Origin: Macrostomum lignano
Lineage: Eukaryota
Direction: 5' to 3'
Assembly (NCBI GenBank): GCA_002269645.1
Contig: NIVC01001537.1
Span: 62,001-126,000, forward strand
DNA length: 64,000 bases
Position numbers and translations under genes: made by a program. Below are positions 55,594 through 63,395 of the stretch, piece by piece. Each line of letters starts with the position of its first letter. Position 1 is the stretch's first letter. The notes beneath the pieces were generated by a model. The model worked only from the letters and a program-made list of their open reading frames with translations, was not told the origin of the DNA and made no database searches.

Positions 55594-56019
55594 TTAGTAC
55601 AGATAGTACAGGTGTGACCTGCGCTTGCCGAAGCGGGGCCGGCTCATCGAGTGCAAGTACTTGTTGAGGCCGTTGATGTACTCGGCCGTAGCAGCCGCGG
55701 TGTCAAACGAAGACCTGCTGCGCTTGCCGAAGCGAGGCCGGCTCATCGAGTGCAAGTACTTGTTGAGGCCGTTGATGTACTCGGCCGTAGCAGCCGCGGT
55801 GTCAAACGACGACCTGCTGCGCTTGCCGAAGCGAGGCCGGCTCACGGAGCGGAAGTACCGGCTAAGGTAATTCAGGTATTCAGCTACGTCATCAGCCGAT
55901 TCGAAGCTGTCAGCGGCCTCCTGCGGCGCTTTGAGCAGATACTTCGACTGGACCAGAGCGGCAGTCGACAGCAGAATGAGGAGTAGACACGGCAGGCTAA
56001 TTCCTCTGGCAGCAGCCAT
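55594..56019 (-). CDS. npf: NPY/NPF-family neuropeptide precursor A, 141 aa, three RPRF-amide peptides (39, 30, 30 aa)
   Basis: Signal peptide, then KYLLKAPQEAADSFESADDVAEYLNYLSRYFRSVSRPRF-GKR and 2x SRSSFDTAAATAEYINGLNKYLHSMSRPRF-GKR. Tyr at positions 10 and 17 from the C-terminus, as in NPY/NPF. TATAAA at 56091-56096; AATAAA at about 55504. Confidence 0.92.
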   Translation of the reverse strand: MAAARGISLPCLLLILLSTAALVQSKYLLKAPQEAADSFESADDVAEYLNYLSRYFRSVSRPRFGKRSRSSFDTAAATAEYINGLNKYLHSMSRPRFGKRSRSSFDTAAATAEYINGLNKYLHSMSRPRFGKRRSHLYYLY

Positions 56020-56090
56020 TTGCTGTGTCTCGGCGAAGCTTTATTCGAAACAGGAGCGCGAAAGAAGACATCATTATAGCACCTGGCAAG

Positions 56091-56096
56091 TTTATA
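56091..56096 (-). promoter_or_regulatory. TATA box of NPF precursor A
   Basis: TATAAA on minus about 72 nt upstream of the ATG, with a CCAAT about 40 nt further upstream. Confidence 0.6.
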
Positions 56097-56159
56097 TCAG
56101 CATCTTGCAGGCTGGCTGCACTGCTCTCTGATTGGACGCCGCTTCATCAGAGTCTCACC

Positions 56160-56920
56160 TCCATATTTCTCCCTAATATGGGGATCTCGGATCATTTCTC
56201 CCTAATATGAGGATCTAGGATGATGTGTCACTAAAATGGGGATCTGGGATGATGTTTCGCTCATATGGGATCTGAGAAGATTCCTCGCTAATATGGAGAT
56301 CTGGGATGATTTCTCCCAATAACATGGGGATTTAGGATGATTTCTCCCTAATATGGGGAACTGGGATGATTTCACCCAATAATATGGGGATCTGAGATGA
56401 TTTCTCCCTAATTTGAGGATCTGGGATGATTTCTCCCTAATATGGGGATCTAGGATGATTTCTCCTTAATATGGGGATCTGGGATGATTTCTCCTTAATA
56501 TGGGGATATGGTATGATTTCTCCCTAATATGGGGATCTGGGATGATTTCTCCTTAATATGGGGATATGGTATGATTTCTCCCTAATATGGGGATCTGGGA
56601 TGATTTCTCCTTAATATGGGGATATGGTATGATTTCTCCCTAATATGGGGATCTGGGATGATTTCTCCCTCATATGAGGATCTGGGATGATTTCTCCCTA
56701 ATATGGGGATATGGGATGATTTCTCCCTAACATGGGAATCTGGGATGATTTCTCCCTCATATGAGGATCTGGGATGATTTCTCCCTAATATGGGGATCTG
56801 GGATGATTTCTCCCTCATTTGAGGATCTGGGATGATTTCTCCCTAATATGGGGATATGGTATGATTTCTCCTTAACATGGGATCTGGGATGATTTCTCCC
56901 TAACATGGGATCTGTGATAA
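56160..56920. repeat. About 30-bp minisatellite (gatctgggatgatttctccctaatatgggg)
   Basis: Direct reading. Confidence 0.9.
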
Positions 56921-57644
56921 CCCTTGAAAAAGACAATTCATTAAAGAAGCAATTTACTGCAAGTGTGCAGCATCCATAATCATATTCTATCTGTATATTT
57001 CAGTTTGGAAAATCATTTTGGTTGTCAAGGTAAACGGTTTTTGGATCAGCGATCGTCATTAGCGGATGAAGCTTTGCTGCTGGCCGCGTCTTTACCATCG
57101 TCCAGGTAGTCGTTGATCTCCTCCAGAGAGGTGAACTGTCTTCACTTTAGGATTCAATCTATTTTGGCTCATTCGATCAAAGCGGGAAAAAGGTGTATTT
57201 GTACTAGCTGTGAAATTTCACCACATTTTGTTTTCGATACAGTCAACAACCAGTGAGTGAGCATTTTTTCAGAATTGACTGACAAGTGCCGTGTATGCCT
57301 GCAATTTTTTGGATATAATTCTGCCATTAGCCTGTTGTTGGATTCTATTTTTTTAGCATATTTTCTCAATTTAGTCGCGCTGAATAATTTTTTTAATTTC
57401 GATTTTTCTCCATTTTTAGCAAATTTAATCTAAAACATTTCCATTGATGTCTGCAAATGGATTTTTTAGCAGATGGATTAGGGAAAAACCTTTGAAAAAC
57501 AATGAAATGCATGCCAGTTTAAATTTGGGGTTTAGCATTCACAAAATGAATGAATCAATGTAGGGGATTATGCAAAAAATGGAAAGAAAAGAAGCTTGAA
57601 ATAGTGTTGATGGAGATTGACTGCCGCGTTTGGGCGGATGTCAA

Positions 57645-58190
57645 AGAGAGAGGGAGACTGTAGGGAGACAGGGAGAGTGAAGGGAGACTGGGAGAGTGAA
57701 GGGAGACGACAGGGAGAGTGAAGGGAAACAGGGAGACTGAAGGGAGACAGGGAGAGTGAAGGGAGACAGGGAGAGTGAAGGGAGACAGGGAGAGTGAAGG
57801 GAGACTGGGAGAGTGAAGGGAGACTGGGAGAGTGAAGGGAGACTGGGAGAGTGAAGGGAGACTGGGAGAGTGAAGGGAGACTGGGAGAGTGAAGGGAGAC
57901 AGGGAGAGTGAAGGGAGACTGGGAGAGTGAAGGGAGACTGGGAGAGTGAAGGGAGACGACAGGGAGAGTGAAGGGAAACAGGGAGACTGAAGGGAGACAG
58001 GGAGAGTGAAGGGAGACAGGGAGAGTGAAGGGAGACAGGGAGAGTGAAGGGAGACAGGAAGAGTGAAGGGAGACAGGGAGAGTGAAGGGAGACAGGGAGA
58101 GTGAAGGGAGACAGGGAGAGTGAAGGGAGACAAGGATAGTGTAGGGAGACAGGGAGAGTGTAGGGAGAGAGGGAGTTAAAGAGAGGGAGA
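57645..58190. repeat. 19-bp purine-rich minisatellite (gggagacagggagagtgaa)
   Basis: Direct reading. Confidence 0.9.
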
Positions 58191-61560: not shown

Positions 61561-61699
61561 GACTGGAACTCAAGCAGTTCGATCTGTCTGCAACAAAGTA
61601 TTATCTGTTGGTTTCAGTTTGAAGTTTTTCGCGAGAAAGTGCGCTGCATGCAGTGACGAAAATCGAAGAGGTCTTTAAAAGAAATTTTGGGAACAATTG

Positions 61700-62060
61700 C
61701 TACATTTAATCCTCTTCATTTGCATGCAATCTGCTACAAATTCAAGCAAAGTGTTAGCAGCCACTCTCTTTAAACTAACCAATCGTCCTTATCTTAGTCT
61801 GGTTGCTATGGAAACTCGGCGAATGTGGAATTATCAATGGCGCAATTTTGTTCTTCCTCCGGGAAACGAAGGGTCGCAGTGCGAACTGAAATCACGGACG
61901 CATTACGGAGAGGCGAAGAATCGAAAATCAAAGCAGCAGCCTCGTGACAAAAGAGCTGTTTTTTTAATTTCCTCATTCAGCGAAAGGAAATTAGAAAGCT
62001 TAGCAGAATTACAAGAAGGCCTCGTTGAAGATGACACTGTGGCTTAGCAAATAAATTGAA
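61700..62060. promoter_or_regulatory. Conserved non-coding block, copy 2: octamer ATTTGCAT (61718-61725) plus X-box GTTGCTATGGAAAC (61802-61815)
   Basis: Exact match to the GTHNYY-AT-RRNAAC X-box consensus; paralogous to 58225-58500. Confidence 0.6.
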
Positions 62061-62139
62061 ATTGCTTTTTTGAATCTCTTTATTCGGTTTTAACGTCAAT
62101 GGTCATACCTCAGTCTGACCTCAGTCAGCGGAGGATTAT

Positions 62140-62740
62140 GGTCATACAAACTAGTTCCGCTATGGTCATGAGATTTATAGCTACTAGTTCCGCCCTGGTC
62201 ATAGGCTCATAGCTTACTAGTTCTGTTCTGGTCATGAGATTCATAGCTACTAGTTGAGCCCTGGTCATAGGCTCATAGCTACTAGTTCTGCTCTGGTCAT
62301 AGACTCAGCTACCAGTTCTGCTCTGGTCATAGACTCATAGATACTAGTTCCGCTCTGGTCATAGACTCATAGATACTAGTTCCGCTCTGGTCATAGACTC
62401 ATAGATACTAGTTCCGCTCTGGTCATAGACTCATAGCTACGAGTTCCGCTCTGGTCATGGACTCATAGCTACTAATTCCGCTCTGGTCATAGACTCATAG
62501 CTACGAGTTCCGCTCTGGTCATGGACTCATAGCTACTAATTCCGCTCTGGTCATAGACTCATAGCTACGAGTTCCGCTCTGGTCATGGACTCATAGCTAC
62601 TAATTCCGCTCTGGTCATAGACTCATAGCTACTAATTCCGCTCTGGTCATAGACTCATAGCTACTAGTTCCGCTCTGGTCATGGACTCATAGCTACCAGT
62701 TCTGCTCTGGTCATGGACTCATAGCTACCAGTTCTGCTAT
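62140..62740. repeat. 32-bp minisatellite (tagttccgctctggtcatagactcatagctac)
   Basis: Direct reading; paralogous to the 38-bp array at 58545. Confidence 0.92.
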
Positions 62741-62981
62741 AATCCATGTCTGAAAGCAACAATCTAAAGCAGTAGTTCAGAAAGCAGTGGCAAAATAATT
62801 TAGTTTTCACAATTGCACGCGTTTATTGTCGGATTTTATTTTGACGCATCGTGTTAGCAATAACAGTTTGCCAAGTAGGAGCTGTGAGAGACAGAGAGAG
62901 GTTCGAGTGAAGAGGGAGAGACGGGCCAGCAATTGACTCAGTAGGTCCAGTTTCTAGGAAACGCTGCTCAATCCAATCGAA

Positions 62982-63395
62982 TCATCGCCTATCAATGCGG
63001 TACATCCGCTTGCCGAAGCGGGGCCGGCTCATGGAGTGCAGGTACTGGTTGAGGTTGTTGATGTACTCGGCGGCCGCGGCCGGGGTGTCGAAGGAGGCCT
63101 GCCGCTTGCCGAAGCGGGGCCGGCTGACCGAGTGCAGGTACTGGTTCAGGCTGGTCACATACTTGGCGGCCTCGGCTGGCGAGCGGAAGTCGTAGGCGTT
63201 GCCGCGCTTGCCGAATCGGGGCCGGCTGACCGAGTGGAAGTACTTGTTCAGGTAGTGTAAGTACTCGGCCACGTCGTCGGCGGAGGTGAAGTCTTTGTTC
63301 ACCTCCTCGGGCGCTCTGGCCAGAGACTTGGACTGGCCGAGGGCGGCGGCGGACAGGATCAAAAGCAGAAGAGTTGACAGTTGAGCCGCGTTCAT
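62982..63395 (-). CDS. npf: NPY/NPF-family precursor C, 137 aa, three RPRF-amide peptides (39, 31, 29 aa)
   Basis: Signal MNAAQLSTLLLLILSAAALGQS; KSLARAPEEVNKDFTSADDVAEYLHYLNKYFHSVSRPRF-GKR, GNAYDFRSPAEAAKYVTSLNQYLHSVSRPRF-GKR, QASFDTPAAAAEYINNLNQYLHSMSRPRF-GKR; AATAAA at 62822-62827. Confidence 0.93.
   Translation of the reverse strand: MNAAQLSTLLLLILSAAALGQSKSLARAPEEVNKDFTSADDVAEYLHYLNKYFHSVSRPRFGKRGNAYDFRSPAEAAKYVTSLNQYLHSVSRPRFGKRQASFDTPAAAAEYINNLNQYLHSMSRPRFGKRMYRIDRR

What the first reader, a model, noticed from the sequence alone, without database searches (positions are those of the whole stretch)
55594..63395. Peptide-cassette shuffling: three module types arranged I-III-III, I-II and I-II-III
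Seen: module I (F.SAD.V.EYL..L..YF) leads all three genes. Module II (DFRSP.EAAKYV.SL.QY) is in B and C. Module III (SFDT.AA.AEYIN.LN.YLHSMSRPRF) is in A twice and in C. The two module-III copies in A are 99-bp repeats with about 2 synonymous differences. Inference: a I-II-III ancestor lost III in B, while in A module II was replaced by a recent copy of III through unequal crossover or conversion between GKR-bounded cassettes.
Basis: partly seen in the sequence, partly recalled or inferred. Interest (0 to 1): 0.7.

Follow-up and report, generated by a model that had tools for sequence, protein, structure and literature searches.

The report
Tandem multi-copy neuropeptide F genes
Three neighbouring genes of the flatworm Macrostomum lignano each encode two or three neuropeptide-F (NPY-family) hormones in a row, built from three cassette types that unequal recombination has duplicated and deleted; this layout is unusual for the hormone family, but it is an ordinary way for neuropeptide genes to evolve.

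Summary
Three minus-strand, intron-free ORFs sit in window 55594-63395: A (I-III-III), B (I-II) and C (I-II-III). They are made of eight GKR-bounded cassettes that fall into three types. The two type-III cassettes of A are 99-bp tandem repeats with 2 differences, both synonymous.

The window is Macrostomum lignano (Mlig_3_7, contig NIVC01001537.1). Every cassette is an NPY/NPF-family peptide (Pfam PF00159) ending in RPRF-Gly-Lys-Arg. These are therefore neuropeptide F prepropeptides with 2-3 NPFs each, no CPON and no Arg-codon intron, all departures from the canonical NPY/NPF gene.

The duplicated cassette in A is not an assembly artefact. All three diverged genomic copies of the locus carry it, each with its own substitutions. 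Two GenBank gene models wrongly skip one repeat (108 aa instead of 141).

Cassettes cluster by type, not by gene. B and C share their 3' flank, and an unlinked fourth gene (D) is I-II. An I-II-III ancestor is therefore the most parsimonious history. Whether conversion replaced II in A cannot be distinguished from deletion followed by duplication.

B is decaying: it shows 7 nonsynonymous and 0 synonymous differences between two copies, and a frameshift plus two stop codons in the third. Krill and marine plankton have independent multi-NPF precursors. Interest is moderate.

The parts
55594..56019 (-). Gene A. An intron-free CDS of 141 aa: signal peptide, NPF cassette I, cassette IIIa, cassette IIIb, then the tail RSHLYYLY and a stop. 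GenBank annotates it as 108 aa (PAA66725.1).
   Evidence: ORF. PF00159 gives 3 stretches at E 1.8e-19. The same 426-bp I-III-III ORF is present in the two other genomic copies.
55945..56019 (-). Gene A predicted signal peptide (aa 1-25, MAAARGISLPCLLLILLSTAALVQS).
   Evidence: A hydrophobic core followed by small residues, judged by eye. No signal-peptide predictor was run. The only amino-acid difference from copy L001 lies here (I15F).
55819..55944 (-). Cassette A_I. Predicted product: KYLLKAPQEAADSFESADDVAEYLNYLSRYFRSVSRPRF-amide (39 aa), followed by GKR.
   Evidence: Coordinates. On its own it hits PF00159 at E 2.5e-6, HMM positions 9-36.
55720..55818 (-). Cassette A_IIIa. Predicted product: SRSSFDTAAATAEYINGLNKYLHSMSRPRF-amide (30 aa), followed by GKR.
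   Evidence: PF00159 E 3.7e-6. 81% nucleotide identity to C_III.
55621..55719 (-). Cassette A_IIIb, the tandem 99-bp copy of A_IIIa. It has 2 synonymous differences and encodes the identical peptide.
55715..55813 (-). The only GT..AG-bounded 99-nt segment whose removal gives the annotated 108-aa product. It is most likely an aligner or gene-model artefact, not an intron.
   Evidence: Enumeration of all in-frame 99-nt deletions. The gene range is 426 bp but the product is 108 aa. The annotation is built from transcript mapping (PMC5730564).
56091..56096 (-). TATAAA consensus 72-77 nt upstream of the ATG of gene A, with a CCAAT at 56131-56135.
   Evidence: Read directly from the sequence. This is a consensus match only, not proof of function.
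55521..55526 (-). AATAAA consensus about 70 nt downstream of the stop codon of gene A.
   Evidence: Read directly from the sequence. This is a consensus match only.
59297..59608 (-). Gene B. The ORF is intact here (103 aa): signal peptide, cassette I (ending LYRF, with the RPRF motif lost), cassette II (ending RPRY), then the tail QYRINRR. It is probably a decaying copy or pseudogene and is not annotated in GenBank.
   Evidence: There are 7 nonsynonymous and 0 synonymous differences from copy L001. Copy L004 carries a +1 frameshift plus TAC>TAG and CAG>TAG. No gene model exists at this position in the loci fetched.
59423..59533 (-). Cassette B_I (EVPEAPTKFNSADEVDEYLQGLNKYFYWLSLYRF, followed by GKR).
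   Evidence: PF00159 E 1.6e-5.
59321..59422 (-). Cassette B_II (SKTKDFRSPEEAAKYVISLLQYVYWASRPRY, followed by GKR).
   Evidence: PF00159 E 5.8e-7. 79% nucleotide identity to C_II.
62982..63395 (-). Gene C. An intron-free CDS of 137 aa: signal peptide, cassettes I, II and III, then the tail MYRIDRR and a stop.
   Evidence: PF00159 gives 3 stretches at E 1.1e-27. The mature region is 100% conserved at protein level in all three genomic copies.
63204..63329 (-). Cassette C_I. Predicted product: KSLARAPEEVNKDFTSADDVAEYLHYLNKYFHSVSRPRF-amide (39 aa).
   Evidence: PF00159 35 bits, E 1.4e-8.
63102..63203 (-). Cassette C_II. Predicted product: GNAYDFRSPAEAAKYVTSLNQYLHSVSRPRF-amide (31 aa).
   Evidence: PF00159 39.3 bits, E 6.6e-10.
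63006..63101 (-). Cassette C_III. Predicted product: QASFDTPAAAAEYINNLNQYLHSMSRPRF-amide (29 aa).
   Evidence: PF00159 34.2 bits, E 2.5e-8.
63515..63520 (-). TATAAA consensus 120-125 nt upstream of the ATG of gene C.
   Evidence: Read directly from the sequence. This is a consensus match only.
58797..59296 (-). 3' flank of B. It is homologous to the 3' flank of C (62519-62981), including a related minisatellite. This marks B and C as the most recent gene duplicates.
   Evidence: blastn of B 59472-58797 against C 63151-62519. The downstream 200 bp of B and C align with z = 17, whereas A does not align with either.

Best explanation
The region is a tandem array of three paralogous neuropeptide F (NPY/NPF-family) prepropeptide genes in Macrostomum lignano, in the order C, B, A on the minus strand.

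Each gene encodes a signal peptide followed directly by two or three NPF-type peptides. Each peptide ends in R-P-R-F/Y, then Gly (the amide donor), then Lys-Arg (a prohormone-convertase site).

Inferred mechanism. Signal peptidase acts first. A PC2-type convertase then cuts after each KR, a carboxypeptidase trims the basic residues, and PAM turns the Gly into a C-terminal amide. One mRNA therefore yields several helical RPRF-amide peptides in fixed ratio. These are one 39-aa full-length type (I) and one or two 29-31-aa N-terminally short types (II, III). They presumably act on NPF/NPY-type GPCRs.

Evolution. The peptide-type signal lies in the 5' half of each cassette. The 3' halves (...Y.HS.SRPRFGKR) are nearly the same DNA in all cassettes, which gives 26-45 bp of homology for out-of-register recombination. 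An I-II arrangement is old, because the unlinked gene D has it. III arose, probably from II, before A and C split. A then lost II and tandemly duplicated III, before the three present genomic copies of the locus diverged. B lost III and is now degenerating.

Shown: sequence, family membership, cassette orthology, reality of the duplication, purifying selection on A and C, and decay of B. Inferred: processing, receptor, order of events, and recombination as the cause.
For: - **Organism.** C is 99% identical to M. lignano PAA79626.1. The window matches NIVC01001537.1 exactly.
- **Family.** PF00159 Hormone_3 scores A 1.8e-19 (3 stretches), B 5.5e-13 (2) and C 1.1e-27 (3). Every cassette alone hits PF00159 at E 6.6e-10 to 1.6e-5 over HMM positions 8/9-36 (B_I 3-31).
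- **Structure.** AF2 predicts one helix per cassette, at low confidence.
- **Cassette types.** Nucleotide identity is IIIa/IIIb 0.98, A_III/C_III 0.81-0.82, B_II/C_II 0.79 and I/I 0.61-0.71. Bootstrap support is 91-96% for III and 93% for II. Type information sits in the 5' half: 32-35/45 identical within a type against 20-29/45 between types. In the 3' half all array cassettes match at 27-40/45.
- **The duplication is real.** All three genomic copies (window, L001, L004) have a 426-bp I-III-III gene A. IIIa and IIIb differ at different sites in each copy. A shared IIIa-specific T at repeat position 84 occurs in two copies.
- **Selection.** Window versus L001 gives A 5 syn and 1 nonsyn, and C 1 syn and 1 nonsyn, with both nonsynonymous changes in the signal peptides. 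B gives 0 syn and 7 nonsyn. Fisher's exact test gives p = 0.007. B is disabled in L004. Unique intergenic divergence is 1.6% and 2.85%, against B 2.2% and 2.9%.
- **Gene order of descent.** B and C share the 3' flank. Gene D is I-II and intron-free.
- **Expression.** The GenBank models for A, C and D derive from transcript evidence (PMC5730564). B has no model.
- **Processing machinery.** A PC2 homologue with an RNAi phenotype exists in M. lignano (PMC4490696).
Against: - No peptide has been detected biochemically and no receptor has been tested.
- Signal-peptide cleavage sites were judged by eye.
- Cassettes are only 29-42 codons long, so dS values (S about 22 sites) and trees are noisy. Deep nodes are unsupported.
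- B's tail starts with CAG (Gln), like the first codon of C_III, rather than ATG as in C. That fits gain of III by duplication as well as it fits loss by deletion.
- Two of three annotated A models are 108 aa, so a real one-copy transcript or allele cannot be excluded.
- The missing model for B could come from the annotation filter against repeat-overlapping transcripts rather than from lack of expression.
- The canonical NPY/NPF gene hallmarks are absent (single peptide, CPON, Arg-codon intron). Orthology to canonical NPF genes, as opposed to homology of the peptides, is not established.
Confidence: 0.8

Rival explanations
1. The second type-III cassette in gene A is an assembly artefact, a falsely expanded tandem repeat. 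The true gene would be I-III (108 aa), as annotated in GenBank.
For: Two GenBank models (PAA66725.1 and PAA79627.1) give 108 aa over a 426-bp range.
Against: Three separately assembled contigs, 1.6-2.9% diverged, all carry two copies. IIIa and IIIb differ at different positions in each contig, and in L004 the difference includes a nonsynonymous change. The third locus is annotated at 141 aa (PAA75755.1). The skipped 99 nt coincide with the single GT..AG placement available to a spliced aligner. The annotation was made by mapping short-read-derived transcripts, and such assemblies readily collapse a 98%-identical 99-bp repeat.
Confidence: 0.03
2. B never had cassette III. The ancestor was I-II, as in gene D. 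III arose later by an offset tandem duplication of II in the C lineage and was then passed between C and A by ectopic recombination or conversion.
For: The outgroup gene D is I-II. C_II and C_III are 76% identical with dS 0.35, closer than A_III to C_III at synonymous sites. B's tail begins with CAG, the same codon that starts C_III, as expected for reciprocal products of one offset exchange. The A and C signal peptides align (z = 6.3), whereas those of B and C barely do (z = 1.8).
Against: The B and C flanks and tails show they are the youngest gene pair. Yet A_III and C_III are clear orthologues with dS 0.63-0.74, not younger than B-C (0.29-0.67). Transfer of III alone between genes 7 kb apart, without the flanking tail, needs a double exchange. 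B's divergent signal peptide is explained by its relaxed constraint.
Confidence: 0.2
3. One reading: in gene A a single gene-conversion event overwrote cassette II with a copy of III. The alternative is loss of II followed by tandem duplication of III.
For: The outcome (I-III-III, with IIIa in the slot of II) is what such a conversion would give. The homologous cassette ends could anchor the tract.
Against: No residue of II remains, and IIIa is 99 bp where II is 102 bp. IIIa carries CCT at repeat position 84, like the end of A_I, in two of three copies. IIIb carries CCC, like C_III. That is what a simple unequal crossover between the end of I and the end of III in an I-III gene predicts, although B_II also has CCT, so this single site is weak evidence. 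The two routes give identical products.
Confidence: 0.3
4. The 99-nt GT..AG unit is a genuine alternatively spliced 'exitron' that lets the animal make either two or one copies of peptide III from gene A.
For: A canonical GT..AG pair brackets exactly one repeat unit. Transcript-based models with and without the unit both exist.
Against: The splice context is poor: CAG|GTCGTC at the donor and no polypyrimidine tract before the acceptor. The segment is indistinguishable from a repeat-collapse artefact. Average M. lignano introns are about 1.1-1.4 kb.
Confidence: 0.05

Closest known systems
Canonical NPY/NPF precursors (vertebrate NPY/PYY/PP; Moniezia expansa NPF; planarian npy-1 to npy-11; Pfam PF00159)
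   Same: The peptide sequence family is the same (PF00159). Shared features are the C-terminal RPRF/RPRY followed by Gly and a dibasic site, a central amphipathic helix with the Y..L..Y pattern, and a first peptide placed directly after the signal peptide. Type I peptides of A and C are 39 aa, the length of M. expansa NPF (PMC6389622).
   Different: Canonical precursors hold one peptide plus a C-flanking peptide (CPON). Their genes have a conserved intron inside the Arg codon of the terminal RF/RY (PMC7314547; PMC2953531). Here there are 2-3 peptides, no CPON, and uninterrupted coding sequence through all eight RPRFGKR sites. Types II and III are only 29-31 aa.
Expanded planarian npy gene family (Schmidtea mediterranea npy-1 to npy-11; Collins et al. 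2010, PMC2953531)
   Same: It is a flatworm-lineage expansion of NPY/NPF-type peptides with both F- and Y-amide ends. B_II ends in RPRY. npy-8 has a demonstrated role in reproductive maturation, which suggests a function to test.
   Different: The planarian expansion is by whole-gene duplication only. Each gene keeps one peptide, and 10 of the 11 keep the Arg-codon intron. In Macrostomum the expansion is also internal (cassettes within a gene) and the genes lack coding introns.
Multi-copy RFamide precursors (sNPF, FMRFamide-like peptides)
   Same: The architecture matches: tandem paracopies separated by G-K-R, and copy number changed by unequal crossing-over. sNPF precursors typically give multiple peptides (PMC7314547).
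   Different: Those peptides are 8-12 residues long and lack the helix matched by PF00159. Here each unit matches HMM positions 8/9-36 of the NPY profile.
Krill 'Neuropeptide F' CAL4093327.1 / CAL4116002.1 (Meganyctiphanes norvegica) and unnamed marine metatranscriptome proteins (P0007, P0008, P0009, P0015)
   Same: They have three (krill) or two to five tandem NPF-like peptides, each ending in RPRFGKR, directly after a signal peptide. This is the same precursor layout.
   Different: They come from another phylum, and the sequences cluster apart (…YAIAGRPRF). The krill gene spans 48 kb for 143 aa, so it contains introns. This points to an independent origin. I found no description of this layout in the papers searched; Toullec et al. 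2013 state that NPF precursors hold a single copy 'as with all other organisms' (PMC3749230).

Membership tests
NPY/NPF peptide family (Pfam PF00159, pancreatic hormone/NPY/NPF) | Significant match of the peptide to the family profile | tested here: met
   Whole proteins score E 1.8e-19, 5.5e-13 and 1.1e-27, all above the 28.7-bit cut-off. Each of the 8 cassettes alone scores E 6.6e-10 to 1.6e-5. Four of the 8 exceed the cut-off on their own.
NPY/NPF peptide family (Pfam PF00159, pancreatic hormone/NPY/NPF) | C-terminal R-x-R-F/Y followed by Gly (amidation) and a basic cleavage site | tested here: met
   RPRF-GKR or RPRY-GKR is present in 7 of 8 cassettes. B_I has LYRF-GKR, with the first Arg lost. 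Amidation itself was not observed.
NPY/NPF peptide family (Pfam PF00159, pancreatic hormone/NPY/NPF) | Peptide of about 36-40 residues (PMC6389622, PMC7314547) | tested here: inconclusive
   Type I peptides of A and C are 39 aa and B_I is 34 aa. Types II and III are 29-31 aa and match only profile positions 8/9-36, so they lack the N-terminal segment.
Canonical NPY/NPF precursor and gene organisation | One NPY/NPF peptide per precursor, followed by a C-flanking peptide (CPON) | tested here: not met
   There are 3, 2 and 3 peptides per precursor. Only 7-8 residues follow the last GKR.
Canonical NPY/NPF precursor and gene organisation | Conserved intron between nucleotides 2 and 3 of the Arg codon of the terminal RF/RY (Mair 2000, cited in PMC7314547; PMC2953531) | tested here: not met
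   All eight ...CGN TTC/TAC GGC AAG CGN sites are contiguous in genomic DNA inside a single ORF. The same holds for gene D.
NPY/NPF signalling system | Peptide activates an NPY/NPF-type GPCR | not testable with these tools
   This needs receptor expression assays.
NPY/NPF peptide family (Pfam PF00159, pancreatic hormone/NPY/NPF) | Helical PP-fold-type structure | tested here: inconclusive
   AF2 without an alignment gives one helix per cassette (residues 39-56, 73-90, 105-122 of C). Mean pLDDT is only 44.5.
sNPF / PrRP-type peptides | Short peptides (about 8-12 aa, ...RLRFamide in arthropods) on multi-copy precursors | tested here: not met
   The multi-copy layout is shared. However, the units are 29-39 aa and match the NPY profile over its helix, and the terminal motif is RPRF.

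The most novel reading that the evidence does not exclude
Macrostomum carries a lineage-specific family of long-NPF genes (A, C, D, plus the dying B). The family has lost the Arg-codon intron and the CPON that are used as hallmarks of NPY/NPF orthology, perhaps through a processed-mRNA (retrogene) ancestor. It has also become multi-copy, the layout otherwise typical of sNPF/FLP precursors. The same multi-copy layout arose independently in krill and other marine plankton. On this reading, 'one peptide per precursor' is not a universal rule for NPY/NPF. 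Co-released long (I) and N-terminally short (II/III) NPFs may address different receptors, as NPY and NPY(3-36) do in vertebrates.
Probability: 0.45. Interest if true: 0.55.

Novelty: new variant of a known kind. Interest (0 to 1): 0.42.

Why it matters
NPY/NPF is one of the best-conserved bilaterian hormone systems. Two features, a single peptide per precursor and an intron in the terminal Arg codon, are used to decide which invertebrate peptides are true NPY orthologues (PMC7314547). This array shows that both features can be lost while the peptide sequence is kept.

The array also offers a small, datable example of how neuropeptide copy number changes. It contains a duplication fixed before a genome duplication, a cassette loss, and a paralogue caught in the act of dying.

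M. lignano is transgenic- and RNAi-tractable, so the roles of long versus short NPFs in feeding, growth or gonad maturation (compare planarian npy-8) can be tested directly.

There is a practical point too. Two GenBank/UniProt entries for gene A are one cassette short, and gene B is unannotated.

Tried and rejected
1. **Exact-protein look-ups.** Look-ups of the window's A and B returned nothing on record. The reason turned out to be that A is annotated as 108 aa and B has no model at all.
2. **Profile search.** A search with nine aligned cassettes (seven from the window, two from D) against 5.8 billion proteins returned only one hit, gene D. The word pre-filter limits it. No other Macrostomum species or flatworm relatives were recovered, so the age of the multi-copy state within flatworms is unknown.
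3. **Literature.** Six searches found no description of multi-copy long-NPF precursors or of Macrostomum NPF genes. The most likely prior source is McVeigh et al. 2009 (Int J Parasitol 39:1243), which mined M. lignano ESTs. It is not held, so prior description cannot be excluded.
4. **Structure prediction.** AF2 on a single sequence gave a low-confidence model. I did not run a fold search on it.
5. **Krill gene.** The DNA could not be fetched, so intron positions there are unknown.
6. **Spurious hit.** P0003 (2577 aa, 11 'stretches') is a low-complexity repeat protein and was discarded.
7. **Divergence estimate.** My first estimate of about 5% divergence between locus copies, taken from long BLAST HSPs, was inflated by minisatellites. 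Unique intergenic segments give 1.6% and 2.85%.
8. **Promoters.** I looked for shared promoters. The upstream 200 bp are not alignable between any pair of genes.

Full report
**1. What is in the sequence**

Window 55594-63395 holds three minus-strand ORFs:
- A, 55594-56019, 141 aa.
- B, 59297-59608, 103 aa from the ATG that starts a hydrophobic leader.
- C, 62982-63395, 137 aa.

Each ORF opens with a signal-peptide-like leader. It then consists entirely of units that end in ...S-R-P-R-F-G-K-R, followed by a 7-8-residue tail.

The eight units have these coordinates:

| Cassette | Window coordinates |
|---|---|
| A_I | 55819-55944 |
| A_IIIa | 55720-55818 |
| A_IIIb | 55621-55719 |
| B_I | 59423-59533 |
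| B_II | 59321-59422 |
| C_I | 63204-63329 |
| C_II | 63102-63203 |
| C_III | 63006-63101 |

A_IIIa and A_IIIb are 99-bp tandem copies that differ at two positions, both synonymous. TRF reports period 99, 2.4 copies and score 438. tblastn finds no further copy in the 64-kb window.

**2. What the cassettes are**

Pfam PF00159 (pancreatic hormone / NPY / NPF) matches A at E 1.8e-19, B at 5.5e-13 and C at 1.1e-27, with 3, 2 and 3 matched stretches. Each cassette scanned alone matches it at E 6.6e-10 to 1.6e-5, over profile positions 8/9-36 (B_I over positions 3-31).

The modules are therefore individual neuropeptide F-type hormones. The Gly is the amide donor and Lys-Arg is the convertase site.

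Predicted products:
- Type I: 39 aa in A and C, 34 aa in B.
- Type II: 31 aa.
- Type III: 29-30 aa.
- All end in RPRF-amide, except B_I (LYRF) and B_II (RPRY).

An AF2 model of C has low confidence (pLDDT 44.5) but places one helix in each cassette.

TATAAA consensus sequences lie upstream of A and C, and an AATAAA lies downstream of A. B has no TATAAA in the roughly 290 bp upstream of its ATG. A 1.7-kb minisatellite begins 240 bp upstream of that ATG.

**3. Organism and copies of the locus**

C is 99% identical to a Macrostomum lignano protein. The window is contig NIVC01001537.1 of assembly Mlig_3_7 (GCA_002269645.1), and window position + 62000 gives the record position.

The assembly holds two further copies of the whole locus:
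- NIVC01000624.1 (loci L001 and L002).
- NIVC01000864.1 (locus L004).

In the one copy examined upstream (L002), a CwfJ-domain gene lies upstream of C. In the window, a tyrosine-kinase exon lies downstream of A. Unique intergenic DNA differs by 1.6% (window versus L001) and 2.85% (window versus L004). This redundancy is expected. The DV1 line is a hidden polyploid, and the assembly has 180 Mb in duplicated blocks at least 95% identical (PMC5730564; PMC7013459 abstract).

**4. Is the duplicated cassette in A real?**

Yes. All three genomic copies contain a 426-bp I-III-III gene A.

IIIa and IIIb differ at different sites in each copy:

| Locus copy | Repeat positions where IIIa and IIIb differ |
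|---|---|
| Window | 9 and 84 |
| L001 | 51 and 63 |
| L004 | 30, 84, 86 and 90 |

The T at position 84 is shared by IIIa of the window and IIIa of L004. The duplication therefore predates the divergence of the three copies. IIIa/IIIb dS is 0.09.

GenBank gives 108-aa products (I-III) for two of the three loci, although the gene range is 426 bp. The third locus is annotated at 141 aa.

The annotation was made by mapping short-read transcript assemblies. Exactly one GT..AG placement removes one repeat unit, at window 55813-55715, and its splice context is poor. I read the 108-aa models as repeat-collapse or aligner artefacts. Real splicing is a low-probability rival.

**5. Do cassettes group by type or by gene?**

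They group by type.

| Comparison | Nucleotide identity |
|---|---|
| A_III vs C_III | 0.81-0.82 |
| B_II vs C_II | 0.79 |
| I vs I | 0.61-0.71 |
| Between types | 0.56-0.76 |

NJ bootstrap support is 91-96% for the III clade and 93% (nucleotide) for II.

The type signal is confined to the 5' half of the cassette: 32-35 of 45 nt identical within a type, against 20-29 between types. In the 3' half all array cassettes match at 27-40 of 45 nt. A 26-nt identical block, TGAGCCGGCCTCGCTTCGGCAAGCGC, occurs at the ends of A_I and A_IIIa. That block is the substrate for out-of-register recombination.

**6. History**

Evidence bearing on the order of events:
- B and C share the tail (Q/M)YRI(N/D)RR and more than 500 bp of 3' flank, including a related minisatellite. 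A shares only coding sequence with them.
- dS is lower for B-C (0.29-0.67) than for A-C (0.63-1.3). This supports the tree (A,(B,C)).
- A fourth, unlinked gene D (PAA84402.1; L003 10001-10318) is also intron-free. It is I-II and ends ...SRPRFG-stop.

III is present in A and C, and II is present in B, C and D. An I-II-III ancestor of the array is therefore most parsimonious, with loss of III in B and loss of II in A.

The alternative is gain of III after B split off, followed by transfer between genes. It is not excluded, because the CAG that begins both C_III and B's tail fits either direction of one offset exchange.

For A, 'conversion of II into III' and 'deletion of II, then unequal crossover between the end of I and the end of III' give the same product. 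The CCT at the end of both A_I and IIIa, against CCC in IIIb, mildly favours the crossover. This rests on a single site.

**7. Selection**

| Gene | Window vs L001 | Window vs L004 |
|---|---|---|
| A | 5 syn, 1 nonsyn (signal peptide) | 3 syn, 2 nonsyn (R129H, which turns RPRF into RPHF in IIIb, and S135L in the tail) |
| C | 1 syn, 1 nonsyn (signal peptide) | 6 syn, 1 nonsyn (signal peptide) |
| B | 0 syn, 7 nonsyn | +1 insertion after codon 51, plus TAC>TAG and CAG>TAG |

The mature peptides of C are identical in all three copies.

For B, the comparison with L001 differs significantly from A plus C (Fisher p = 0.007). B's overall divergence (2.2% and 2.9%) equals or exceeds the intergenic rate. 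B has no gene model in the loci fetched.

B is best read as a pseudogene in the making. Its I-II layout is not a functional variant.

**8. Comparison with what is known**

Canonical NPY/NPF genes, including all eleven planarian npy genes, encode one peptide plus a CPON. They carry an intron in the Arg codon of the terminal RF/RY (PMC2953531; PMC7314547). [quoted passage not shown]

The Macrostomum genes meet the peptide-level criteria but fail both gene-level hallmarks. This is so even though M. lignano genes average 4.9 introns.

An exhaustive HMMER search shows they are not unique in layout:
- Meganyctiphanes norvegica (krill) has a 143-aa 'Neuropeptide F' with three tandem NPFs.
- Several marine metatranscriptome proteins have two to five.
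- The krill gene spans 48 kb, so it contains introns and is an independent invention.

I found no paper that describes either case. The key flatworm survey (McVeigh 2009) was not available.

**9. Verdict**

This is a real and well-supported feature. It is a tandem array of non-canonical, multi-copy, intron-free NPF genes whose cassettes have been duplicated and deleted by recombination between their conserved 3' ends.

The cassette dynamics are the usual way neuropeptide paracopies evolve. The moderately unexpected part is that this happened in the NPY/NPF family.

Novelty: new variant of a known kind. Interest: about 0.4.

Noticed in passing
window 54977-55261, 56165-56918, 57646-58175, 58549-59060, 59849-61559, 62150-62738, 63690-63997: The NPF genes are embedded in minisatellites with periods of 24, 29, 19, 38, 26, 32 and 12 bp, in up to 66 copies. 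The 38-, 26- and 32-bp arrays share a GGTCATAGAC core. The arrays downstream of B and C are homologous. The arrays differ in length between the three genomic copies and inflated the apparent divergence between loci.
   Followed up: partly
window 29279-32056 (+): A 925-aa 'ORF' is the read-through of a 39-bp minisatellite, (IEWIANLAYINEG)n. Its Pfam hits (NAPRTase_N, CEP192) have zero individual stretches and are spurious.
   Followed up: yes
window 53696-54520 (+): An exon-like ORF encodes a protein tyrosine kinase catalytic domain (PF07714, E 9e-50). It is convergent with gene A and is the downstream neighbour of the NPF array in the window. Its presence in the other two copies was not checked.
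   Followed up: no
L004 6555-6867 and 10001-10426 (NIVC01000864.1): In the third genomic copy, gene B carries a +1 frameshift and two in-frame stop codons. The second type-III cassette of gene A has RPRF changed to RPHF (R129H). The redundant copies are beginning to degenerate.
   Followed up: yes
window 55594-56019; GenBank PAA66725.1 and PAA79627.1: Two public protein records for gene A (UniProt name 'Neuropeptide Y', 108 aa) lack one 33-residue cassette that is present in the genomic DNA. Gene B has no public model.
   Followed up: yes
L003 10001-10318 (NIVC01000376.1): A fourth, unlinked, intron-free NPF gene (D, PAA84402.1) has two cassettes. The first ends in RPQF-GKR. The second ends in RPRF-Gly directly before the stop codon, so no convertase step is needed for the last peptide.
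   Followed up: partly
proteins P0005/P0013 (Meganyctiphanes norvegica), P0007/P0015, P0008, P0009 (marine metatranscriptomes): Independent multi-copy NPF precursors occur in krill and unidentified plankton. The partial 'Euc-NPF2' of ice krill, which has a dibasic site upstream of a 17-aa ...AGRPRFa peptide (PMC3749230), may be a fragment of the same kind of precursor.
   Followed up: partly
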